Below, in pieces: positions 3,190-19,250 of a stretch of 64,000 bases of DNA. A model generated the notes under the pieces. That model searched no databases, was not told where the DNA came from, and saw only the letters and a list, made by a program, of their open reading frames with translations. Origin of the DNA: Utricularia gibba (Eukaryota > Plantae > Magnoliophyta); contig NEEC01000009.1 in assembly GCA_002189035.1 (NCBI GenBank), forward strand, positions 1,612,001-1,676,000, given 5' to 3'. Both the position numbers and the translations under genes were made by a program. Position 1 is the first letter of the stretch, and every line of letters begins with the position of its first letter.

Positions 3190-6122
3190 TCATCGATCGC
3201 CTGTGGAGTAAAATGAATCAGTGAACTCCCGTTCCCGTGACTTGGAGGGCGAATCGTCCTTTGTTTCTCTGCTGGTTCTGCTGTAATCCGATCTACTAGT
3301 GTCCTCTTGCCAAGCTTTCAGGAGCAGGGGGAGTGGGGTGAGAGCAAAGCTTGCGCAGCTGTTTGAGGAGTGATCCATTTCCTGATATGGTTTCCATGTA
3401 TCCACCAGTTGAGCTAGCACGTTTGCAATGTATCCCATTTCAGGGCGATGATTGGGCTCTTTGATGGTGCAAAGAGCAGCTAATTCTGCTATTACGTGAA
3501 TGCTTTGGTAGATGTCTTCTTTTGCACCAAGAGCAGGATCAATGGAAGCAATCAGATCAGACTTGTTTGATTTTCTGGTAAGAAACCAGTTCACCAAGTA
3601 CTGATCTTCCTCCGGCCGATGAGCATCCAGCGCCGGTGATCCGGTCAGTAGCTCCATTAGTATCACCCCGAAGCTGAACACATCAACTTTGGTGGTAACT
3701 TTACCCATAACTGGAGACACAAAAGCTGCAGTTAAAAAGTATTGTGTAAGGGATGAAATGAGCTTGAACAACATTTAGCCACTTTACCTGCATACTCAGG
3801 AGCAAGGTATCCAAATGTTCCAGCCAGCTTTGTGGCAACAGTTCTCCCCTTATCAGGAACCAGCTTCACCAATCCGAAGTCTGAAACTTTCGCCCGGTAA
3901 CCATCACCGAGAAGTATGTTTGCAGATTTGAGATCTCGGTGAATGAAGCTTTGCTCTGTTAATGAATGGAGATACTCCACTCCTTTGGCAACATCAAGGG
4001 CGATAGCCAGTCTTGTTGTCCAACACAAAGGCTCCATTTTTAGGCTTTTCCAACGGAACAAATGTCTGCTTAGAGCCCCCTTTGGCATGCATTCATATAC
4101 CAGAAGCCTCTCATTTCCCTCAATGGAGTAACCTAAAAGAGAGACGAGGTTTCGGTGTCTGAGCTTCGAGAGGGAGGCAATTTCAGCTTGGAATTCAGCC
4201 AGGCCCTTGCTGCCTACCAGCCCTGCTTCCATTCTCTTGACAGCAATCTCTTTATCATCATCAAACTTGCCTCTGTAAACTACTCCAAACCCTCCCCGTC
4301 CGAGCTCATTTTCTCGAGCAAAATTGTTGGTCACTCTTTGAAGGAGGTGAAAAGAGAAAACAGGGTTTACTACCTCGATCACTTGATCATTATTCAATGC
4401 ATCACTCATCTTGGTTACCTTGCTACTACCTTGATGGGCCTCCTTTGAATATGCATCCTGTATGGCAATCTTTACCATGTCATCCGGATCCGATGAATCA
4501 GCGTCCATTGCAGTCACAGTGGAAAACTTTTTCATCATCTTTTTTACCCTCCTCCGGATGCATATCACCGATACCAATATTGCAAGAACAGAAAAACCTA
4601 CACAAGCTGAAGCTGCAACCAGAATGGCAACTACTCTGGGGTTTTTAGAGTTTTGCAGCATTGGCTGTCCATTACCATCAGATGAAGGAGATAAAGTATG
4701 ACCAGGAGCTAGTGATTCATTCCAATGGGAAAATGGTGACTCGGGAGTGGGAGAGGGTGCATCATGCAACAATTTCTGATTACCATCTATCACAACGATT
4801 ACAGCATTGCCAAACTTTGGCAGAGGTGGTTCAAACTCATTTCCAGTAACGTTTAACAGCTTTAGTGATCTCAGGCGGGTTAGTTCCTCCGGAACCACAC
4901 CCTCCAAACTGTTTCCTTCTAAGTGAATTCCAACTAACGAAGATAAGTCACCAAGAGAAGGACTCAGAGTACCATTAAGACCAAGATTAGGGAGATTTAT
5001 GATTGAAACTTGGTTGTGAATGCAAGTGATCCCCCACCATGGTTTACTACAAGGATCATCACCTGTCCAATCAGAGGCAAGTGTTTTTGGATAGTTCAAG
5101 TAATGAAGAAAATCCAGAAGAGCACTAACTTCAGGAGAGCATTCCTGACCAGGAATATCAGAACAGAAGGAATTGGAATCTAGTTTGACATCTGCAGTTC
5201 TGAACTTCGGTATCGATCCCATGAGCATATTATTGCTCAAATCAAGTACTTCAAGGTTCAAAGTAGACAACCCTTGTGGAATCAACCCAACTAGTTGATT
5301 TCTATTCAATCTGAGATCCTTAAGAGAAGTTAAATTCCCAATATTCTCTGGAATCGACCCTGTAAACTGATTTCCATGAAGCCAGAGTTTAGTTAAACCA
5401 ACCATACTACCAATGACTTCAATAGTTCCTGATAATCCGTCCCCTTTCTGATCATTCAAACACAAAATTTGCAACATCATGCTATTAACACTACTCGGTA
5501 TTTCTCCAGTGAATGCATTCCCGGAAAGCGTCAGCACTCTCAGAGATGATAACATGCTGATAAAATCCGGAATCTGACCAACTAAATTACAGTTCCAGCA
5601 AGAAAAATTTGCCAGCTGAGTGAGCTCACCCAGCTCACTAGGTAAACTCCAACCAAAACTCCTATTCAAAGGGTTGTTATCCAAAGCAAGAACACGAATA
5701 CTACTTAGCCCGTGAAAAAAATCGGCAGGAATAGTATCAAAATCGTTGAAATCTAAGTATGCGTATTGCAGATTAGACAAACCACTGAAAGATGGCAAAA
5801 TCCCACTGAAATTGTTCTTCTGGAGACCAAGGTTTTGCAGCATTTTTAACTGATTAAGATTCTGAGGCAGCTGCCCTTTCAATCCCAGGCCCCGCACCTG
5901 AATTTGGGTGACACTTCCATCAGCGCAAAATACATGAGGCCAAAGGGGAGGGCCGCAAGGATCATTCCCCTGATCAGGCCATTCAAGAAGATGCGGATTT
6001 TCTAACCCATTTCTGAAATCGTTCAAAACAGTGAAATCATTTGGATTCGTGAAGCAAGAAGCCATTCCCATAGTGAGAGTAACCAGAAAAATGTGACGAA
6101 ACTTCATTGGATCAAAATGCAC
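3190..6122 (-). CDS. TMK: TMK/BARK1-type LRR receptor kinase; 2 exons
   Basis: It has a signal peptide, two LRR blocks split by a Cys-pair island (DPCSKPWWGITC), a TM helix and an active kinase (GRGGFGVVY, AVKRM, HRDLKSAN, DFG, GTFGYLAPEYA). The 77-nt intron 3787..3711 joins APEYA to VMGKVTTKVDVFSFG, as in the TMK family. Confidence 0.93.
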
Positions 6123-6416
6123 TCGTAAACTGACTCAACTCACTCTTCTCCTTCAATTAAGGATGAAGAGGCTTGGAAAAAAATACCCACCAGGGGCAGT
6201 GTATGATTTATCGCCAATGCGGTTACGCAGCGAGAAAACAAGTGACGGGAAATTTGGATCTTCAGCCATGATTGTAGCCTGAACGAAAAAATGGTGATGA
6301 TTCTGTTTGTTTCACAAATAAAAAACGAATAATGATTTTCGAAAATAGTTAACGGATATCTGGACTCTGGAAGAACCTCTGGTTAGGTTAGTCAACATGT
6401 CATGTTCATGATCCCA

Positions 6417-7762
6417 TCAAGAACAAAACTGTTGCCTGAATCCAAACCGCTGGTTCAGGAGATCGAATTCAAGGAAAAAGTTCTGCACAAACAAGTTTCC
6501 GAGTATAACCGCCGGCCCTCTCGGTGCCGTCTCTGGACCCATCGGCGTTCCATCGGAGACGGCGGCGAAGCACAAAGCTTCGTTCTCGCCGTCTCTCACC
6601 CGGGCGAAGTAGTTTTCCAACGGGAGCACCATTTTCCCCCTCCCTTGAAATGAAGCTTCAGTTGTGGAATCATCTTTGTGGAATTTCGTCCAACATCTTG
6701 GAAGCAGGGACTCAACCCTGACGCAGTCTCCATTTTTGAACTTCTGTTGTACGCTTTCACTTGCTCCGCAAACACTTCCGAGACGGATCGGAACACCGCC
6801 CTTGTCATGTAAGTCAGAGTTGAACCGGAATCCACGATCGTTCCGCCGTTGCCGGTGGAGATTTCTTGGTAATCGACATCAACCTTCTTCCCGCCGATGG
6901 TGAATTTCCTCAATCCGACGTAGTAATACTCAGATAACCCGGTTTTCTCCGGTAGATTAGGGTTTTTCAGAAACGGCGTGTAGGTAAGATTCTGTGTCTT
7001 ATGATGGGAATTTGATTCTGAGTCCATCAACAACAAGCTGCTTCTTGGATTTCCATCAAATCTGTGGGGAACTAAGCAGTAGGAGAATTTCTTCAACCCT
7101 AATTGACTCGGGATCGAGGCTTTACCGCGGCCGAAGCCAGCGATCCCCGCCGGCAGATTTGCGGCGTAAACAGAGCATCCGATCAGAAAATCAGGTACAC
7201 TCTTCTCACTGGAAAATGTCAACGTGTCCACCATCGCCACTCCTCCGGTGGACCCAGAGCCGTAGAGAATGACATACGGCGGACATATTTCTGTGCAGTT
7301 GTTCTTTTCCTGCAACCGGCAGTTGGGGCAACTTGTTTGAGAATCAAAGGATTTATGAATCCAATTACACTTGGGATTCAAACACCCCACGATTCTCGCG
7401 GAGGACGATTGTCTCGGCATGAAAGGAGATGAGATGGAGCAGTGATCGCAACGGTAGCTGTAGGTACAGGGTAACCAAGACATGGTGCTGCCGGTGTCCA
7501 TGAACATGGAGAGGTGCTGCGGCGGCGTGCCAAAGCCGAGAATGATGGAGTAGGCTCCGGCGAAGGGTGAAAGCGGCGCGGAGGAGGTGTATCCATTTTT
7601 GAGGTGGCGAGCTCTGGCTATGGCAGTGGAGGCAAGGAGTGTAATTCTGTGGAAGGGGTTTGTTGGGTGAAGCAAGAGGGTAACAGCAACAGATGCATCA
7701 GAAACCGAGGAGAACAAAGAAAGGAAAAGGGAGAGAACCAGGACTCCAAACATGGACGCCAT
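6417..7762 (-). CDS. Secreted A1 (pepsin/nepenthesin-like) aspartic protease, intronless, with apparent 1-bp frameshift near the C-terminus
   Basis: It has a signal peptide, both catalytic motifs (MDTGS, VDSGST) and a Cys-rich nepenthesin-type insert. The C-terminal part (MVLPLENYF...VILGNLFVQNFFLEFDLLNQRFGFRQQFCS) lies in the adjacent frame, and one extra base in the C5 run at 6636-6640 joins the two. Confidence 0.9.
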
Positions 7763-8516
7763 CAGCGATGTGGCTTCAGCTTCGGGGATGGAGGAAAGAA
7801 AAGAGGGAGACGGATGAATGAATCTCTGAAACGACTAAATGCAGGTTCACGGGGTTTGAAACACGCGCAGCTCACCGCAACTCCGACTCACGAGACCTGG
7901 AACGTGATCTCAAAGGCGGCGATTGAGGTGAAGATTGCAGAACCATTGATAGAAACCTTCCTGTAAAACGAACGCAAATGGGCTTGATTACATTACTGTT
8001 GCAAAACTAGGCAACAGCTGCACATGCTGACCTCTGGGTTTGAGTGGGCGATGATTGACAGACAGCCAAGCCAAATCATTGATGAGTTGTGGTGGCAAAA
8101 GAAAATGCGCACATGTTTTGATTTCGGGTCTCCACCCGGCTAACGCACACTGAATTCCCTGCTGGGCTGGCGGTTACTCGATGACTGTACAGAGAAGGCC
8201 CGTCCCCCTTCTTGGGCCGCCGTCTCTTGGTTTCTGGTGTCTTTATTACTAATTTGATATGTTAAAATAGGAAGCACGTGGGTGAAATGGAGTCGGCGCG
8301 TGCGTTCTCTCGACCTACTGGGTATGGAAATAGGCAGGATGGCACTCCGTAGTCTACGCCACGGGCTTTGACTGAGACTGAATTCAGTCAATGAATGCCA
8401 CCTCGTGAAACTTCTCTTCTCCTTCCTCCCAACACTGGTATAAAACACTTTCTTTCTTTCTTCTTCTTCGTCATCCACTCAAACACGGCTCAAAGTCAGA
8501 AGCTTGTTCTGCTTCC

Positions 8517-9343
8517 ATGGCCATGGCTTCCTTCGAGGAGAGTAGACCCGTAAAGATCCGCGAAGTTTGGTCACATAACCTCGAATTCGAGTTCTGCATC
8601 ATCTCCCAGCTCATCGATCGTTACCCTTTCGTTGCGATGGACACTGAGTTCCCCGGAGTCATTTTCAAGCTGCCGCCGCCGTGGACCCGCTCCTCCGCGG
8701 ATCATTACAGCACGCTCAAATCCAACGTGGACGCCCTCAACATCATCCAGATCGGGCTCACGCTCTCGGATTCTTTTGGGAATCTCCCGGATCTCGGCTC
8801 CGGCGACCGATACATCTGGCAATTCAATTTCTCTGATTTCGATGTGGCGCGTGACCCACACTCTCCGGACTCCATCGATTTGCTCCGCGCCCACGGCATC
8901 GACTTCGACAGGAACCGCACCGACGGGATCCAATCGGCGCGGTTCGCCGAGCTGATGATGGCATCCGGCTTGGTGTGCAACGAGCGCGTCAGCTGGGTCA
9001 CGTTTCACAGCGCGTACGATTTCGGCTACCTGGTGAAGATCCTCACGCGCCGCCTACTCCCAACGGGGCTCCCGACTTCCTCGCCGTTCTCAGAGCGCTA
9101 TTCGGGAGAAACGTGTACGATGTGAAGTATATGATACGGTTCTGCCATAGCTTGCACGGCGGACTGGACCGCGTCGCATCCGCCTTGAACGTGAACCGGG
9201 TTGTCGGAAAGTGCCACCAAGCAGGCTCCGACAGTCTCCTGACGTGGCACGCTTTTCAGAGGATGAAAGATGTGTATTTCTACGGGCACGCGCACAGAAG
9301 ATACGCTGGGATTCTCTACGGCTTAGAACTAGAGGGACACTAA
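8517..9343 (+). CDS. CAF1: CCR4-associated factor 1 (CAF1/POP2) deadenylase, intronless, with apparent 1-bp frameshift
   Basis: DEDD nuclease motifs are present ([28 protein letters not shown]). The frame switches at 9065-9073 (GGGGCTCCC), and one extra base gives a continuous ORF. Confidence 0.92.
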
Positions 9344-9696
9344 AGGAAGTGTCAAAAACAAGAACCAGTGAAATTGCATATTTTATTCTTTAAAATAAGC
9401 ATTCTGAGTTGCCGATAAATAGCAGAAATTAACTCATTGCTTTTACTGTACACATGTTATCACGCAGATGAAGTCTAAGTTATTTTGATTAAATTACCAA
9501 ACACAAAACAAAAGCCGTTGATGATACCAGAAAGCCAAAGAAATGCATGCCAAAGATATTTGCATTGACTAAGAAACAGGTATTTATCAGGAGTCTACAC
9601 TACAGGAAAACTTGTTTTAGTCCTATGGGGAGGTCATAGTATAGACGCTTTGGATGTACAGTTCAGGGAGACTTCAGGCTACCTTCAGTTTCAAGA

Positions 9697-11934: not shown

Positions 11935-12517
11935 TTTCCTTGGCTAATACAAGAAAATCAGATAATGAAATTACAAGGAAACTCCGGGAACCTCCTCTTC
12001 TTTTCACTGATACGTATTCGGTATTCCAGTTGCTCGTCCTCGTGCCAGAAAAACATCTAAGAGGGCTTTCCGGTCACCACCGTGAAGAGACCTCGTTCAC
12101 GAAAGAGGCTTCGGGCCGAATAAATGCTTGAGAAGGAGATCATTGAGGCCTTCAAATCTATATAGTATACTATTCTTTATTTCTTTATTATTACATAAAC
12201 GAATGGAGTTGGTCACAAAATTGTTATATACAGGAGTCCGTATCCGAATCCCGTACCCAGGATCCGACTCCCATATTTGACCCGAATCCGAGTATCATGC
12301 CACTTCTGATTGGATTCTGCTAGCACAAGTGCATGCAATGCACCACAGCCAGAAGAGGAATGGAGGGAGAAGAGTAGTAGGTAACTTATTGCGCTTTGAT
12401 AGCACTCATATAGCGTCAACCAGCAGGCCACAGTAAACGGGATACAAACTGCAAAACTATAAACTACACGTAGTGACGGGAGGGAAAGGAAAAGTGATGC
12501 AACCAGAAAAAACATAC

Positions 12518-15013
12518 TTATTCTGCGGCCTTCCCTTTGCGTCTTCCGTTTCCGCTGATTTCAATCAAGTAACAGACCATTGCATCTACGTCATCCCCGA
12601 AGATCCCATGAGCTTCCATCACCTGCATGTAGCTGAATCCCATGGCCAACATCACTTGCACGCTGCTGCTTAGAACTGGAGATTGCCCTTCTCCTGCAAA
12701 TGTTACCAGCATGTCATAAATAAATACACCCAAGTAAAAGGTCGACTATCATGGGACGAGAGTTAAGAACTTACTACTAGCTGTGGAGGATGATGGTTCA
12801 GCTCTAGAAGTTGAGGATTCCTGATGAATAACTTCATGTTTCAGCTTATTACCAGCAAGATACTCAGCCCTTGAGGCTTCCATGACCATTCTCTCGATTT
12901 CCTTTTCAGTCAGCTCAAGATCAGAGTAGAAGCGTCCTTCGGCAACAAGGGCCTAGCAAGACCAGCGGATCTTAATATACGGAAATTTATAGACATCATG
13001 CGATAACCCAATCACTTACATTATCAATCTGCTGGTCCTGTTGAGCTTTGATTGCTGCTTTCACCTGATCTTTATCAATATTTGCCTAGGATACACAGTC
13101 ACCAGTTCAAGAATCACGGATGCATTGCAAGAACTCCTGTTAATCTAAAATCTTGATGAATATGCAGTAGAAAAAGAAAAAAACAAATTGGCATACCCCC
13201 TGAAGAGAACTAAATCCAAGTCCAGCTCCGATGTTTAGTTGGCGTGGGTCTACAAGTGAGTTGTAATGATTGCCATGGTGGTAGCTCAACCGTATAGGAG
13301 GAGTGTCCGTGGTATAGTTTCCGTGGAATATATTTATGGGTTCTGAATGACAAAATTACAGTGTCAGGGTTAGAAAATATATCATCAATAAAAAGACATG
13401 GTATAGCACTCAAAAAGCACCTGCACTGTAGGAGTAGATATGAATAGGCCGGTTATACATTTCTGACAAAGCTTGGATCTCAATATTATTGCCATAAACC
13501 TAAGAAATCAAGAAAATCAAATAATAAAAACTAGCAATAAATTCTAAGTACAACACTTTTTTCTCGGACAGGTCACATGGAGCACATAAGTTAACAAGAT
13601 ACATTCAATTCTTCCTCAAGAAAAAAAAAAAAGATGAAGTCGTTTTTTAATTCAGCATTTTAAATCTGCAGTTGACGATCACCGAATGATAATGATATAT
13701 TGTACCTTATCCCTTCTCTTCCTCTTACAGTAGGAAGTAAAACCTTCCGTTATGAACTGTGAGAAATGGTTTCTTTCACGCTCCTGCAATGTTCTGAAGA
13801 AGGTAAGTTTTTCCATGCCGAAAAAACAAAACGGGTGCACAGATTATACCAAGATGAAAGCCCTGTCTAGATGAAAAAATTGAGGAGAGTGAACGGTTAA
13901 CATAAACGAAAAGTTTTCTTTTTTTTTTTTCTCATTGCATATTCATTTGGAGAAACAGAGGTCACGCACCATGTAGTCAATGCACAACTGTCTGACCAAA
14001 TCATACAGCTCAGAGTCACCATAAACTTGATCTGCCACAGCACGAAATAAGCAATTCCCATCTTCAAGCATTTTTCTGACTTCCAACCCTTCAATGCGCC
14101 TTAATTCAATCTCAAAATGGTGTTCTCTTTCCTGAAATGGAAAAATCAAGATATGCAAATGAACAAACCAAGGCTTGCACAAACGTATGATCTAAGGTCA
14201 GGCAATGAAACCATTCACTTAGAAGTCGGGTGCTTATTCATTTTTCTCATATGATTCAAAAAAAATGAAGGCATCTGGCAATCATATTTCAATGGCACAC
14301 ACATTATGTGATAAATCTCCACTATAGTTAAGATGTAAAGATGAGACTCTAGAACTCACAGCATCGTTATAAGAACTTAGGGACTGACTCTGCTCATCGG
14401 CACTGTTGTATCCTTCACCATCGCAATGAGAACGAGGTGAAGATGGGTGAGATGCATTTGGTGATGACCGGATGGAGACACCAGCCCACCCAGAATTTCT
14501 TCTAAATGATGTGGGCCTTGTACCAGCTGAGTCAGAAGAAGAAATCCTTGTGACTGAGTTCGATGATGAATGCTTGAGAGGTGGTGCAGGAGGCGGTGGT
14601 GGGGGATTTGAAGTGCCAGTCATCATCTGGATGGAATTTCCACCAACTGTATCTTTTTCATCAAGAATTGATAATCCGACAAGCCCCTCCTGCGCATTCC
14701 CAGGATTCACTGGATCACCATGAAATATCTCATTCTCCAAGACATTAACCTCATCTTGGTAGTTGTGTACATTTTTAGTTGCAAGATCCTCAGTTTTTCT
14801 TCCCTCGCTTCTATTTTCTGGAATGTCTTCCTGTACTTCATTGTGAAAAATCTCCTCATGCACTTCTTCAGCAATATTCTCATCTTTTACTATAGCACCT
14901 TGAGTGTTGCTTGCGACCTGAGTGGTTGCAACTGATACTGATGTTGATGGTCGGTTATTACTAGATGATGAAGATGAACCGGAGGATCCTCGCTGCACCA
15001 GTATCCGTGTCAT
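12518..15013 (-). CDS. OTU-domain deubiquitinase (OTUD5-like) with C-terminal UBA-like domain; multi-exon
   Basis: The catalytic motifs EDGNCLFRAVADQVYGD and RLSYHHGNHYNSLV are present, along with the family N-terminus MTRILVQRGS and the C-terminal VMLAMGFSYMQVMEAHGIFGDDVDAMVCYLIE. The exons I joined splice in frame with GT-AG introns. Confidence 0.92.
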
Positions 15014-15637
15014 ATTGGTCTTTTCTTAAAATAAGAGACCAAAACCTCTTATATTTCCCCGAATTCTACACGCACAATGCTGCAGGCTTAAATTCTCCCC
15101 TGTCCTGGCCTCACGAGATGTCTCGCCAACTCTACCTGTTAGCTATTTTTGGTTCCTCAAGCATCAATCTTGCACTACCCTAGTCATGAGACCTTGACCT
15201 CCAAACCAATGTTACTAACAAAAAAGACGAGCACTTGAGCGCGATACGGCGTAGATAACATATGAGCAACTTCCATAAACTGCAATTTAAGAAAATTGCT
15301 AGATAAACGGGAACAAAAATGAAACGTATTTGATATACCTCCATCAAAGATGGAATACCAGAATCACAAGAGCCAAGGTGCATCAGATAATCAAAATATA
15401 CTTCAAAACAACGAGAAAAATCACGAGCATGCACGGATTAATAGGGTGACAGCGTAAGCCCTAGAATTAGTTGGATTCCATTAAATTACTCACCGGAGCT
15501 AAGCGATCACAGAGGTGGTTCCCAAAATAGGGTTTAGCGCAATCCACCAAAAACGTCAGGAAGAATACCTTTCGAGTAAGGGTACTGTGACTCTGTAGAC
15601 AGTCGTAGGGATCCTTACGCGGGTCCGTGCAGCACAC

Positions 15638-15640
<3 letters not shown>

Positions 15641-15680
<40 letters not shown>
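15641..15680. repeat. (GA)20 microsatellite, reading (CT)n in the probable 5' leader of the OTU gene
   Basis: Directly visible perfect dinucleotide run. Confidence 0.95.
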
Positions 15681-15683
<3 letters not shown>

Positions 15684-15724
15684 GGAGAGAGACGTCTCCT
15701 ATGCGGGATAGATCGTGAGGCTGG

Positions 15725-15770
15725 GATCTTTATAAAGATCAGGAAATGAAGATCACGTGACCAGCACGTG
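15725..15770. promoter_or_regulatory. Candidate bidirectional core promoter: palindromic TATA plus two G-boxes
   Basis: GATCTTTATAAAGATC (15725-15740) is a perfect palindrome that gives TATAAA on both strands. CACGTG occurs at 15754-15759 and 15765-15770. The element lies between the divergent OTU and AKR genes. Confidence 0.55.
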
Positions 15771-15900
15771 GTACCCTCAATTTTTCATTCCACTTGTTTT
15801 TAAATCAAATCCGCTTATTAATTACAACAGTATTTCAAGCTCTTATCTTCGAACGCTTCATTACTCACTGCCACAACGGGTTCTCGATTGAAAGAAGCGA

Positions 15901-18564
15901 ATGGCGGTTACCGCTGCAATCTCACTGCGGCTTGTCATTGCCGGCACTAAAGATTATCGGCTATCCGGAGAACTGCGTAGACAGGAGAGACATAGACACC
16001 GACCTCTGGTGCGGTGCTGCGAGACGGCGGTTGAGGAGGCTACGGCTGAGAGGACGACGGTGGTGAGTAATGGGAAGGATTCACTCCGGATATGCAGAGT
16101 GCTGGACGGTATGTGGCAGACCAGCGGTGGATGGGGAAGAATCGACCGTGACGACGCCGTTGAGGCGATGTTTCGCTACGCCGACGCTGGACTTGGAACC
16201 TTCGACATGGCCGATCACTGTAAATAGTCTTCCCTTCGTTTGTTGGTGTTTGTTTTTTCAACTGATAGATGACGAGAATTATTATATTATCTGGACAAAA
16301 GTGTAATTGCATCTGAGAAGAGCATATGGCTAGGAATTTAAGTGGGCGTGGAAGATCGAAATTCATTTAGGATAGCTCCATTTTCAGAGTTGTGGTGCTT
16401 TCTTGTAAAGCTTTCAATGACGGGAACGCTGAATGGATCATGGATTTTGTGTACTCTCTCCCCCAAAAGCATCAGTAATAAAAGAGTTTATGGAGTTAGA
16501 AAATATTCTCGTGGGTCACTCGCTTGCTTGTTAACCTTTGACAAAGAGAGAGTTGAGGTAAGGAATGGGAAGGATTCATTGGACATCTGCAGAGTGGTTA
16601 ACGGGATGTGGCAGGTGAGTGGAGGCTGGGGAAGAACTGATGTCGAGAATGCAGTCGAAGCAATGCTTCGATATGCTGATGCTGGGCTTAACACGTTTGA
16701 TTTGGCTGATATTTGTAAAACACCTGAATTTGCATCTTATTTTGGTTCATTGTTTGGGATGCATTTCTTATTGTTTTCTATATGTTTCACAGATGGGCCA
16801 GCTGAGGATCTTTATGGCATTTTTATAAATCGTGTGCGCAGGGAACGGCCTCCTGAGTATCTGGAAAATGTGAGGGGGTGAGTGAATACACTCTTTGCAT
16901 GAAAATCAGGAAGTATGCGGGTGCCCTTCCTGGTTTCATACGCTGCTTGTTATAACAGCAGGGCTATTTTTCCTTGTAAAATGCAGCCTTACAAAATGGG
17001 TTCCTCCACCGGTAAAGATGACTTCTAGCTTTGTTCGTGATAGTATTAATGTGTCCCTGAGGAGAATGGATGTTGCCTGTTTAGACATGCTCCAGTTTCA
17101 TTGGTATGTAACTATCAACATCATCTCTACTTATAAAACGTTATTATAGTCTGTATTGCACCGATGCAATGACTTAAGTACTTGGAAACTTGTTCAAATT
17201 GTTTATGATAGTTTTCTTAATAAATATTTTTGTTCTGTGGCAATGATACCCGCACGGGTATGGCCTTTATGAATATATGTATATCTTTTTTGTATAATTT
17301 TATGTGGCAACATGGAATATTTATGCCTTGAATTTTGCTATGGTCTTGTGAAACCAGGTGGGACTACTCGAATCCTGGCTACCTTGACGCTCTTAAGCAT
17401 CTCACAGATTTAAAAGAGCAAGGTTTGTTTTTCTGTTTGGTTTAAAACGCTAGACGCAGAATGAGAAATCTTGATTTGAGAGGATTGCTATAGGAAAAGA
17501 AATCCCGTTGCAGGTAAAATTAAGACAGTAGCTTTGACTAATTTCGATACTGAACGGTTGCAAAAGATCCTTGAGAATGGAATTCCAGTTGTTAGCAACC
17601 AGGTGATGGATCCTTGAGATTTCTCTCTGATTTTTTAAGTTGTTGCTTGGAAAGTACTAATTCCTGGTTCCCTAGTCATCTAAACTTGTTTGATTTGAAC
17701 TCTTGACCTCCTATGCTCACCACCATTCATCAACTTCAAAATGCTAACATGCTCCATCTTTCTTCAGGTACAGCATTCCATTGTTGATATGCGCCCTCAA
17801 CGGAGGATGGCAGAGCTTTGTCAGCTCACTGGAGTAAAACTAATAACGTCTCTTGCGCTCTCCTTCTCCCTCTTTAACACTCCTCGACATGGAAAGGCTG
17901 TGTTCAATATCGAAGAATCTCATGGATCGCACTTCTACGTTTGCAGGTATGGGACAGTGATGGGTGGTCTATTATCCGAGAAGTTCCTCGATACAAATTT
18001 AAATATCCCTTTTGCGGGTCCTCCATTGAATACTCCTTCCCTCCAGAAGTACAAAAGAGTAAGTAATGCTGTTGGTCATTGCTTATTCAATCTTCATAAC
18101 AGTATTTGACACGATGGCTGGATACAATGCAGATGGTTGATGCATGGGGAGGATGGAGTCTTTTCCAAGAACTGCTGCAAACCCTGAATGGAATAGCCTC
18201 TAAGCACGGTGTAACAATCCCTTCTGTTGCTGTGAGATATATTTTAGATCAGGTAACTTCTGCAACTCCCTAAGATTGTACAGATACATGCTCTCGTATC
18301 ATTGGATATAAGCCCGTTTTCCTTGATTCTGTCGGTGGTTGCAATTTAGATGCATATTCTTGGTGTTTGTGTTTTCAGCAAGCTGTCGCTGGATCAATGA
18401 TAGGCGTCAGACTCGGGCTCGCAGAACACATAGAAGACACGAAAAGGATTTTTTCCCTGGTTCTGGACGAAGACGACATTGCCAGAATCTCACAAGTTTG
18501 TAGTAAAGGCAAAGATCTCCTTAAAGTAATTGGAGACTGTGGAGATGAGTACAGGCGTGTGTGA
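15901..18564 (+). CDS. NAD(P)-linked aldo-keto reductase family protein (often annotated flagellar radial spoke protein 5-like) with two alternative first exons
   Basis: AKR motifs include GMWQTSGGWG, TFDMADHY (catalytic Asp/Tyr), LTKWVP, DMLQFHW, ALTNFDT, SNQVQHS and the terminal GDCGDEYRRV*. Exon 1a is 15901..16219, exon 1b is about 16417..16714, and the common exon 2 starts at 16793. Confidence 0.9.
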
Positions 18565-18700
18565 AATTTGTATGCATTGAATGCATTGTGAGTTTTATCG
18601 AAGCTTCTATTGTAATCCTTCAACTGCGGCTGGAGCTTGAAGTGGAAAGCCACCCCACCCGTTCGACAAAATGCCTCTTACAACCTTGTTTTGTCGTATA

Positions 18701-18754
18701 TGGGCCTTCGTTCACTGGGTTCGCATTGGGCCTTTAATGAAATGCCTAGGCCCA
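18701..18754. promoter_or_regulatory. Site II (TGGGCY) cluster upstream of the RPP2 pseudogene
   Basis: TGGGCC occurs at 18701 and 18727, and GGCCCA at 18749. Such clusters are typical of plant ribosomal-protein promoters. Confidence 0.5.
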
Positions 18755-18876
18755 ATTTCGTCCCCCAAACCATGCGCGAATGTTCTTTGGGTATTCTTGG
18801 AGAAATAGAACTGTCTTTTTGTCTTGACTGAGGTGCTTACTTGCTCCAGTTTTCGGAGTTAACTCTTTTGGGAGCA

Positions 18877-19250
18877 ATGAAGGTGGTTGCAGCATACTTG
18901 CTGGGGAACGGTTTTGAAGGATATCCTTCTTGTGCTCCGTTACTTTTTCCTTTTACTGCATTTGTAGTTTCAGTTATGTGAAGAGGGAAGGAATCCTTAG
19001 TAATGTCAAAAGACTCAAATCCATACTTCACGTCATTGCTTTTTAATGCAGAAGTTTTTGTTGTTTTTGGTCGATGGTTATGCCTTGCCTGTTCACAGCC
19101 GGGGCGGACGCAGACGATGATAAGATTGAGCTATTGCTGTCACAAGTCACTGGCAAGGATATAACTGAACAAATTGCCTCTGGCCGAGAAAAACTAGCCT
19201 GTTGGCTGCCGCTGGTGTCACCGCTGCTCCCTTAACCAGTAAAAAAGAAG
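18877..19250 (+). pseudogene. RPP2: Unprocessed 60S acidic ribosomal protein P2 pseudogene
   Basis: The ATG at 18877 gives MKVVAAYLL, followed by a deletion and frameshift (an LKDIL remnant lies in another frame) and loss of the GT donor. The exon from 19099 reads GADADDDKIELLLSQVTGKDITEQIASGREKLA, then frameshifts to a stop. No SDDDMGFSLFD tail was found. Confidence 0.88.

What the first reader, a model, noticed from the sequence alone, without database searches (positions are those of the whole stretch)
15901..16881. Aldo-keto reductase with two tandem-duplicated, mutually exclusive first exons that swap the targeting peptide and the active-site neighbourhood
Seen: the same 52-codon block occurs twice, in exon 1a (VSNGKDSLRICRVLDGMWQTSGGWGRIDRDDAVEAMFRYADAGLGTFDMADH) and exon 1b (VRNGKDSLDICRVVNGMWQVSGGWGRTDVENAVEAMLRYADAGLNTFDLADI); by my count 39/52 residues are identical. 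Third positions are strongly diverged (GC-rich in 1a, AT-rich in 1b), yet neither copy has a stop or indel. Both end in a phase-1 T/GTAAA donor (16219, 16714) that completes the Tyr codon with the shared exon 2 at 16793. Each copy has its own in-frame ATG (15901; 16417) followed by an S/T/R/K-rich leader that is poor in acidic residues at its start. Known: in AKRs the D and Y of FDxAxxY are catalytic-tetrad residues. Inference: one locus makes two enzymes from two promoters, differing in transit peptide and in the residue next to the catalytic Tyr (ADHY vs ADIY), and both copies are under purifying selection. Strong internal GTGAGT donors at 16063 and 16615 could add further isoforms.
Basis: partly seen in the sequence, partly recalled or inferred. 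Interest (0 to 1): 0.8.

Follow-up and report, generated by a model that had tools for sequence, protein, structure and literature searches.

The report
Reductase gene with two first exons
A plant aldo-keto reductase gene has two duplicated first exons, each with its own transcription start and both spliced to the same second exon, so one gene makes two enzyme forms; the exon pair is found across flowering plants and databases list both forms, but I found no paper describing it.

Summary
The two 52-codon blocks (16063-16218 and 16558-16713) share 39/52 residues and 108/156 bases. Synonymous sites are saturated and dN is 0.19.

RNA contigs from two independent studies show both predicted junctions, 16219>16793 and 16714>16793. 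The exon 1b contigs start inside intron 1, at 16376 and 16383, with no coverage between the two exons. Exon 1b carries about 18-27% of the depth. No contig joins 1a to 1b, and the internal GTGAGT sites are not used.

The exon pair is old. An H-type exon (L...ADH) and an I-type exon (V...ADI) occur in many eudicots, grasses and a magnoliid, and RefSeq lists them as isoforms X1/X2. The order is H-I in eudicots and I-H in rice and Tasmannia. Musa, Brassica and Rhynchospora have only H.

Both copies are under purifying selection (omega 0.06 and 0.12 against Citrus). Only two block positions separate the types everywhere: L/V, and H/I next to the catalytic Tyr.

The two leaders are homologous, so different targeting is not shown. 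Verdict: real, conserved alternative first exons, a new member of a known kind. Function is still untested.

The parts
15630..15850 (.). Upstream promoter region of exon 1a. It holds a (GA)n run at about 15640-15680 and lies between this gene and a transcript of the neighbouring gene that reaches 15629.
   Evidence: Sequence. In run X1 a 2129-nt contig ends at 15629 and the exon 1a contig starts at 15851.
15851..16219 (+). Exon 1a (H-type). 5' UTR from at least 15851; ATG at 15901; leader 15901-16062; conserved block 16063-16218; phase-1 donor T|GTAAAT after 16219.
   Evidence: RNA contigs cover 15851-16219 (X1), 15896-16219 (X5) and 15941-16219 (X10), and all join to 16793.
16220..16375 (+). 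Intron sequence between the two first exons. It has no RNA coverage and must hold the promoter of exon 1b. A TATA-like ATTATATTAT lies at about 16279-16288.
   Evidence: Depth bins are fully explained by the exon ends alone. Sequence. The promoter role is inferred.
16376..16714 (+). Exon 1b (I-type). 5' UTR from about 16376; ATG at 16417; leader 16417-16557; conserved block 16558-16713; phase-1 donor T|GTAAAA after 16714.
   Evidence: Contig 16383-16714 joins to 16793 at depth 13.9 in X1. Contig 16376-16714 has depth 79 in X5 and ends exactly at the donor. Five RNA runs hold 97-100% of the sampled words of this exon.
16793..16877 (+). Shared exon 2. Its first two bases complete the catalytic Tyr codon (T|AT). 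It encodes YGPAEDLYG and onward.
16987..18564 (+). Shared exons 3-9: 16987-17103, 17358-17422, 17514-17602, 17768-17847, 17947-18058, 18133-18252 and 18379-18564 (stop). The 3' UTR reaches at least 18675.
   Evidence: The gene model gives open frames of 390 aa (1a form) and 383 aa (1b form). All seven introns are confirmed as GT..AG joints in RNA contigs.

Best explanation
This is a nuclear aldo-keto reductase gene of the plant clade that databases label 'flagellar radial spoke protein 5' or 'oxidoreductase At1g06690-like'. From memory it is the At2g27680 type. It has two tandem, paralogous first exons.

Each first exon has its own start codon, its own N-terminal leader and its own copy of the first 52 residues of the barrel, up to the residue before the catalytic Tyr. 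Transcription from the upstream promoter gives exon 1a, whose donor at 16219 is spliced to exon 2 at 16793. Exon 1b is then removed as part of the intron, because no acceptor in front of it is used. Transcription that starts inside that intron, near 16376, gives exon 1b, whose donor at 16714 is spliced to the same acceptor. Promoter choice alone therefore makes the two exons mutually exclusive.

Shown: both mRNAs exist, 1a is the major form, and both exon copies are old and under purifying selection.

Inferred: the two proteins differ in function through the fixed pair L/H (1a) against V/I (1b). H/I is the residue just before the catalytic Tyr, which is an active-site position in other aldo-keto reductases. 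The two promoters probably give different expression. Both leaders descend from one presequence, and the 1b leader's start is not mitochondrial-like, so both forms probably go to plastids.
For: Transcripts:
- In X1, contig 15851-16219>16793 has depth 38.2 and contig 16383-16714>16793 has depth 13.9. Their sum is close to the depth of 58.4 on the common exons.
- In X5, from another study, the 1a form has depth 358 and a separate 16376-16714 contig has depth 79.
- There is no coverage at 16220-16375 and no 1a>1b joint.
- Exon 1b words are 97-100% present in five RNA runs.
- A stop two codons after the 1a donor rules out a read-through fusion in this window.

Selection:
- Between the two copies, dS is saturated and dN is 0.19.
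- Against Citrus orthologues, omega is 0.06 for the H block and 0.12 for the I block.

Conservation:
- Both blocks occur in one locus in Citrus, rice and Tasmannia.
- About 40 fused gene predictions from eudicots and grasses hold both blocks.
- H and I forms of one species are listed for Ipomoea triloba and Silene latifolia (RefSeq X1/X2) and for Ranunculus and Kalanchoe.
- Spliced I-type contigs occur in other species' runs.

Tree and residues:
- In the best tree all angiosperm H blocks lie on one side (91-96% bootstrap) and all I blocks on the other (93-97%). Window 1b is sister to Sesamum 1b.
- Only positions 14 (L/V) and 52 (H/I) separate the types in all 37 H and 25 I blocks.

Active site:
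- The N-terminal block aligns to AKR14A1-type chains, with FDxAxxY in register.
- AKR1C1 and AKR1C2 differ in the active site only at residue 54, Leu against Val (PMC5349110). Established knowledge, not checked in a paper here: that residue lies next to the catalytic Tyr55.
- Full-length relatives match Pfam PF00248 at E 1e-72.
Against: - The RNA evidence is assembled contigs, not reads or CAGE. The 1b start (16376/16383) is only where assembly ends, and the tissues are unknown.
- A third study (X6) and a related organism (X10) showed no 1b contig, at low depth.
- No protein-level, localisation or enzyme data exist for either form.
- Musa, Brassica and Rhynchospora manage with the H exon alone, so the I form is dispensable in some lineages.
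- The window's own 1a copy carries Asp at a position that is Asn in every other angiosperm block sampled (Thr in the liverwort Calypogeia), and Asn in runs X5 and X10.
Confidence: 0.8

Rival explanations
1. The two first exons mainly send the enzyme to different compartments: 1a to the chloroplast, and 1b to mitochondria, another plastid type or the cytosol. The catalytic difference would be secondary.
For: The leaders differ strongly in core eudicots. H leaders average 59 aa, 24% Ser+Thr and 12% Ala, with the first acidic residue near position 38. I leaders average 47 aa, 17% Ser+Thr and 4% Ala, are richer in Lys, and usually have Glu at position 3. The I leader is unusually well conserved in length and pattern across eudicots.
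Against: The two leaders are homologous. In Tasmannia the two whole first exons, leaders included, are 239/300 bases identical, and the leader sequences are visibly alike. Tetracentron I and Nelumbo H leaders align over their whole length, and so do Colocasia I and Spirodela H. Both types keep the x-(R/Q)-C motif before the mature part. In this window the first 20 residues of the I leader hold no Arg, and Arg is also rare there in the other eudicot I leaders aligned. From memory, that is unlike mitochondrial presequences. No targeting predictor could be run.
Confidence: 0.25
2. Exon 1b is a decaying relic whose transcripts are noise from a cryptic intronic promoter. Only the 1a enzyme matters.
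For: 1b is the minor form, at 18-27% of depth. It is absent in Musa, Brassica and Rhynchospora. One Malus locus carries a broken copy with a stop in the 1b leader.
Against: The frame is open, the start codon is conserved and the donor phase is exact. Omega is 0.12 against Citrus, and synonymous sites between the two copies within this gene are saturated. The I-type exon is kept in dozens of species from Ranunculales to asterids, in grasses and in a magnoliid. Ile at position 52 is invariant in 25 I blocks.
Confidence: 0.05
3. The H/I pairs of eudicots and of monocots plus magnoliids arose by separate duplications, followed by parallel change to L...H and V...I. This would explain the opposite exon order.
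For: The order is H-I in Citrus and this window but I-H in rice and Tasmannia. The Tasmannia copies are much more alike (dS 0.72) than copies elsewhere. The AU test does not reject a tree with all eudicot blocks as one clade (p 0.195).
Against: The best tree groups all H blocks and all I blocks across monocots, the magnoliid and eudicots, and the constrained tree is 17.4 log-likelihood units worse. This rival needs the same two substitutions (to L at position 14, to I at position 52) to be fixed independently in each lineage. An array that gained and lost copies explains the order flip without any convergence.
Confidence: 0.15

Closest known systems
UGT1A and clustered protocadherin loci of vertebrates (variable first exons, each with its own promoter, spliced to common exons); comparison from memory
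   Same: Tandemly duplicated first exons, each with its own promoter and start codon. Exclusivity comes from promoter choice. The variable exon encodes the part of the protein that decides specificity, and the common exons encode the rest.
   Different: There are only two copies here. The variable part is small: a leader plus 52 residues, with two fixed differences. The gene is a plant organellar-type reductase. The copy order differs between plant lineages.
Type I alternative first exons in plants (Chen et al. 2007, PMC2174465)
   Same: Mutually exclusive first exons from two transcription starts in a plant gene.
   Different: That survey reports that most type I cases leave the ORF unchanged, and the words 'duplicat' and 'aldo' do not occur in its text. 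Here the two first exons are paralogous, coding and conserved across angiosperms.
Mutually exclusive internal exons from tandem exon duplication (as reviewed in PMC6071210)
   Same: They arise by tandem exon duplication, keep the same length and phase, and exactly one copy reaches each mRNA.
   Different: Internal pairs need a splicing mechanism, such as competing RNA structures or steric hindrance. Here no such mechanism is needed, because no acceptor in front of exon 1b is used in any run.
Arabidopsis At2g27680, an uncharacterised protein recovered as a chloroplast 2-Cys peroxiredoxin interactor; identity of the clade is from memory
   Same: The same aldo-keto reductase clade, as judged by the Brassica orthologue. 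It carries an H-type first exon with a leader ending in the x-x-C motif (the Brassica copy reads V-N-C). Arabidopsis and Medicago family surveys place it in a group of its own (PMC7037683; PMC7346168).
   Different: The Brassica locus has only the H exon and a 75-bp first intron. The model plant family therefore probably lacks the second form, which may be why it has gone unnoticed.

Membership tests
Aldo-keto reductase superfamily (Pfam PF00248) | Significant match to the family profile over the whole barrel | tested here: met
   Each first exon alone gives E 1e-4 (1a) and 5e-6 (1b) on profile positions 2-41. Full-length I-type and H-type relatives, 79-83% identical to the window's forms, give E 1e-72 over profile positions 2-289 of 291.
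Aldo-keto reductase superfamily (Pfam PF00248) | Catalytic tetrad Asp-Tyr-Lys-His | tested here: inconclusive
   Asp and Tyr of FD(M/L)AD(H/I)|Y align with FDLANNY of AKR14A1-type chains. Candidate Lys (GLTKW) and His (LQFHWW) are present in the translation, but I did not align them to a solved structure.
Alternative first exons (type I, mutually exclusive) | Two different 5' exons, each joined to the same downstream exon in separate transcripts | tested here: met
   Joints 16219>16793 and 16714>16793 lie in separate contigs, and no 1a>1b joint is seen.
Alternative first exons (type I, mutually exclusive) | An independent transcription start for the downstream first exon | tested here: inconclusive
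   1b contigs from two studies begin at 16376 and 16383, are collinear with the genome and have no upstream joint. Coverage at 16220-16375 is zero. This fits an internal start, but contig ends are not mapped transcription starts.
Tandem exon duplication | The two exons are homologous, have the same phase and lie next to each other | tested here: met
   39/52 residues are identical, both donors are phase 1, and the exons are 197 bp apart. In Tasmannia homology covers the whole first exon, including the leader.
Named bacterial reductase equivalogs (YdjG methylglyoxal reductase, YghZ L-glyceraldehyde-3-phosphate reductase, DkgA) | Score above NCBIfam's curated cut-off | tested here: not met
   The best score is 63.5 bits against a cut-off of 550. 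These names are only distant resemblances.
Chlamydomonas flagellar radial spoke protein 5 (the name given by RefSeq) | Full-length similarity to the solved spoke protein | tested here: not met
   Only residues 160-322 align with 7jtk chain I (E 3e-19), and the N-terminal catalytic block does not align. The name is an annotation transfer, not evidence of function.

The most novel reading that the evidence does not exclude
Promoter choice flips a two-state switch that flowering plants have kept for well over 100 million years. It sets three things at once: where and when the gene is expressed, which of two related presequences the protein carries (perhaps tuned to different plastid types or ages), and the active-site pair L/H or V/I of an otherwise identical and still uncharacterised plastid reductase. 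One gene would then supply two substrate specificities. The opposite exon order in eudicots against rice and Tasmannia would mean that the array has been rebuilt by gain and loss of copies while selection kept exactly one copy of each state.
Probability: 0.3. Interest if true: 0.65.

Novelty: new member of a known kind. Interest (0 to 1): 0.5.

Why it matters
- It is a clean, conserved plant example of a duplicated coding first exon used through alternative promoters. This kind is well known from vertebrate UGT1A and protocadherin genes but rarely documented in plants.
- It explains a frequent annotation error. About 40 deposited angiosperm gene models of roughly 390-570 aa fuse both exon copies into one protein.
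- It marks the residue before the catalytic Tyr, and one strand residue, as the positions evolution has held different between the two forms. That gives a direct handle for finding the substrate of an uncharacterised plastid reductase.
- The Brassica orthologue lacks the second exon, so the Arabidopsis family probably does too, and the second form will not be found by work on that model.

Tried and rejected
- Both blocks in one mRNA: rejected. No such joint exists, and a stop follows the 1a donor after two codons.
- Internal GTGAGT/GTAAGG donors at 16063, 16558 and 16615, and a possible 16062>16558 in-frame join: no joint in four runs.
- A splice acceptor at 16387 feeding exon 1b from upstream: rejected. 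The contigs run collinear with the genome past it, to 16376 and 16383.
- Literature: seven searches gave no description of this exon pair (papers read). One search call failed on term length.
- Amborella locus: the protein is not on record, so no DNA was obtained. Only a truncated X2 form was seen, with V at position 14 and H at position 52.
- A moss-like contig for P0056 could not be read because the file was too large.
- Earlier notes of this scan hold nothing on this locus.
- NCBIfam gave no family above its cut-off.
- Not attempted: a targeting predictor (none available), structure prediction (no coordinates are returned, so distances to the active site could not be measured) and tissue-resolved expression (the single read-laying run was already used).
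Full report
**1. What is in the sequence**

The gene lies on the + strand. My model has nine coding exons.
- The first exon is either 1a (CDS 15901-16219) or 1b (CDS 16417-16714).
- Exon 2 is 16793-16877.
- Seven more exons follow, ending at the stop at 18564.
- The model gives open frames of 390 aa (1a form) and 383 aa (1b form).

The two conserved blocks are 16063-16218 and 16558-16713.
- They share 39/52 residues and 108/156 bases.
- Third codon positions agree at only 21/52. Third-position GC is 0.63 in 1a and 0.46 in 1b.
- Nei-Gojobori counting gives a synonymous difference of 0.82 per site, which is saturated, and dN 0.19. The excess of synonymous over non-synonymous change has Fisher p about 1e-12.
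- Both exons end with T|GTAAA in phase 1. The T joins AT of exon 2 to make the Tyr of the FDxAxxY motif.

**2. Both first exons are used, from separate starts**

Five RNA runs from two studies hold 97-100% of the sampled words of exon 1b. I laid four runs on 15501-18900.

| Run | Exon 1a contig | Exon 1b contig | Depth on common exons |
|---|---|---|---|
| X1 (study P1) | 15851-16219, joined to 16793, depth 38.2 | 16383-16714, joined to 16793, depth 13.9 | 58.4 |
| X5 (study P2) | 15896-16219, joined to 16793, depth 358 | 16376-16714, depth 79, ends exactly at the donor | 358 (same contig as 1a) |
| X10 (related organism, low depth) | 15941-16219, joined to 16793 | none seen | 6.83 (same contig as 1a) |
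| X6 (study P3) | not covered | not covered | 3' exons only |

- In X1 the two first-exon depths sum to about the common depth. This is what two branches that meet in an assembly graph look like.
- The depth bins between the exons are fully explained by the exon ends, so 16220-16375 has no coverage.
- The 1b contigs run collinear with the genome past the acceptor-like ttttcag at 16387 and carry no upstream joint.
- No joint links 1a to 1b, and none uses the GTGAGT/GTAAGG sites at 16063, 16558 or 16615.
- All seven downstream introns are confirmed as GT..AG joints.

Exon 1b therefore has its own start, somewhere at or a little upstream of 16376, and makes about 18-27% of the transcripts in these samples.

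Caveats: these are assembled contigs with word depth, not reads. The run type is guessed as RNA, although the removal of eight introns shows it is. The tissues are unknown.

**3. The exon pair is old and widespread**

A search of 1.8 billion representative proteins with the exon 1b peptide returned proteins that carry both blocks one after the other.

A wider search listed about 40 angiosperm gene predictions, mostly of 390-570 aa, that fuse both copies. They include Glycine, Vigna, Prunus, Malus, Citrus, Acer, Gossypium, Theobroma, Vitis, Camellia, Beta, Spinacia, Linum, Populus, Sesamum, Buddleja, Salvia, Tanacetum, Coptis and several grasses. The same search listed many RefSeq 'isoform X2' proteins of about 380-387 aa that carry the 1b-type N-terminus.

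I call the copies H-type and I-type.
- H-type: ...RVLNGMWQ...FDMADH, as in exon 1a.
- I-type: ...RVVNGMWQ...FD(M/L)ADI, as in exon 1b.

H and I forms of the same species are on record for Ipomoea triloba and Silene latifolia (RefSeq X1/X2) and for Ranunculus and Kalanchoe.

The window's forms are closest to Sesamum and Buddleja, so the organism is probably in or near Lamiales.

At the DNA level:

| Locus | First exons found | Order |
|---|---|---|
| Citrus | H at 6043-6303, I at 6834-7085 | H-I |
| This window | H (1a), I (1b) | H-I |
| Rice | I at 4082-4288, H at 4574-4768, exon 2 at 5227 | I-H |
| Tasmannia (magnoliid) | I at 8001-8300, H at 9110-9409, exon 2 at 12294 | I-H |
| Musa, Brassica cretica, Rhynchospora | H only, short first intron | - |
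| A second Malus locus | degenerate copy with a stop in the 1b leader | - |
| Selaginella, a Ceratodon-like moss, one unidentified non-angiosperm contig | single first exon | - |

Outside angiosperms the picture is as follows.
- Ginkgo, Adiantum, Diphasiastrum, Sphagnum, Ceratodon and Calypogeia proteins all have V or I at block position 14 and H at position 52.
- The only Amborella protein seen, a truncated X2, has V and H.
- Selaginella and the alga Closterium have I at position 52.

**4. One duplication or several?**

A maximum-likelihood tree of 76 blocks puts all 37 angiosperm H blocks, grasses and Musa included, on one side of a branch (96/85). The I blocks lie on the other side (93/79). 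Window 1b is sister to Sesamum 1b.

I then removed three long outgroup rows and added the Tasmannia H block. All 38 H blocks (91/79) and all 30 I blocks (97/79) are again each on one side of a branch. Forcing all eudicot blocks together costs 17.4 log-likelihood units, but with only 52 columns the AU test does not reject that tree (p 0.195).

The simplest reading is one duplication before monocots, magnoliids and eudicots split. Later gain and loss of copies in the array would then explain the opposite order. Separate duplications with parallel change are not excluded.

**5. Selection and what differs**

- Against Citrus orthologues, omega is 0.06 for the H block and 0.12 for the I block.
- Across 37 H and 25 I blocks, only two of the 52 positions separate the types without exception: position 14 (L against V) and position 52 (H against I).
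- Five more positions differ only in their majority residue.
- Compared with non-angiosperm land plants, the H exon changed at position 14 and the I exon changed at position 52.

Position 52 is the residue just before the catalytic Tyr. The block aligns with AKR14A1-type structures, with FDLANNY matching FDMADHY. In human AKR1C1 and AKR1C2 the equivalent residue (Leu54 against Val54) is the only active-site difference (PMC5349110). That this residue lies next to the catalytic Tyr55 is established knowledge, which I did not check in a paper here. A difference in substrate handling is therefore plausible, but it remains an inference.

**6. The leaders**

In core eudicots the two leader types look different.

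| Feature | H leaders | I leaders |
|---|---|---|
| Mean length | 59 aa | 47 aa |
| Ser+Thr | 24% | 17% |
| Ala | 12% | 4% |
| Typical ending or pattern | ...SVRC(C) | MAE-LL..SF.(K/N)FTFN...RK...RPFQCV-LTED-(K/N)RR |

They are nevertheless homologous.
- The two whole first exons of Tasmannia, leaders included, are 239/300 bases identical, and the leader sequences are visibly alike.
- The Tetracentron I leader matches the Nelumbo H leader along its whole length.
- The Colocasia I leader matches the Spirodela H leader.
- All keep an x-(R/Q)-C motif before the mature part.
- In this window the first 20 residues of the I leader hold no Arg, and Arg is also rare there in the other eudicot I leaders aligned. 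From memory, that does not look mitochondrial.

I therefore rate 'both forms go to plastids' above 'different compartments'. No predictor or experiment was available to test this.

**7. What the enzyme is**

- Full-length relatives match Pfam PF00248 at E 1e-72.
- No NCBIfam equivalog comes near its cut-off.
- The RefSeq name 'flagellar radial spoke protein 5' rests on a partial match to the Chlamydomonas protein that does not cover the catalytic block.
- From memory, the clade is that of Arabidopsis At2g27680. Two papers treat that protein as uncharacterised: one recovered it with chloroplast 2-Cys peroxiredoxin (PMC7346168), and a family survey puts it in a group of its own (PMC7037683).

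**8. Novelty**

Alternative first exons from tandem duplication are a known kind. Automated annotation already lists the two forms in many species. Seven literature searches found no paper that describes this exon pair, its age, its two fixed residues or the order flip. The general plant survey of alternative first exons does not mention duplication.

I class it as a new member of a known kind. It is well supported at the transcript and evolutionary level and untested at the protein level.

Two earlier first-stage notes of this scan flag duplicated or alternative first exons in other genes of the same genome, NAGS and BCKDH E1-alpha. I did not test them, and they did not change my reading.

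Noticed in passing
window 16105 (codon 69 of the 1a form): The assembly and run X1 have GAC (Asp) in the NGMWQ motif. Runs X5 and X10 have AAC (Asn), which is also the residue in every other angiosperm H and I block sampled (Thr in the liverwort Calypogeia). The window's genotype therefore carries a rare change at a near-invariant residue of its major isoform.
   Followed up: partly
window 15501-15850: A (GA)n run of about 40 bp at 15640-15680 sits in a gap of about 220 bp. On one side a 2129-nt transcript contig reaches 15629; it probably belongs to the minus-strand gene whose ORF starts at 15013. On the other side exon 1a starts at 15851. This looks like a short bidirectional promoter.
   Followed up: no
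L006 223-3811 (rice) and L010 2092-4841 (Rhynchospora): In both monocot loci a monodehydroascorbate-reductase-like gene (Pyr_redox_2, MDHAR3-like_C) lies directly upstream of the reductase on the same strand. An Hpt-domain gene lies downstream in rice, and also in Tasmannia (L008). Some synteny is conserved around this locus.
   Followed up: no
L002 6001-8230 (Malus domestica, second locus): This is a degenerate second copy of the gene. Both first-exon blocks are present, but there is a stop in the 1b-type leader and several common exons are missing or scrambled. It looks like a decaying duplicate, yet it has been deposited as a 341-aa protein.
   Followed up: partly
P0006 (Closterium sp. NIES-64, 492 aa): The algal homologue's predicted protein repeats the first part of the block (GKDSLD.CRVVNGMWQSSSGAW) three times, and a later segment (TKFVP..DR.TR.VV.VAI) also three times. 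This may be tandem exon copies or an assembly or prediction artefact.
   Followed up: no
P0424 (Kingdonia uniflora, 351 aa): This is the only protein seen with L at block position 14 together with I at position 52. It may be a chimeric gene model or a real recombinant between the two exon types.
   Followed up: no
window 16420: Run X5 reads G instead of A, which changes codon 2 of the 1b form from Thr to Ala. Ala matches the MA- start of 1b-type leaders in Sesamum and most other species.
   Followed up: partly
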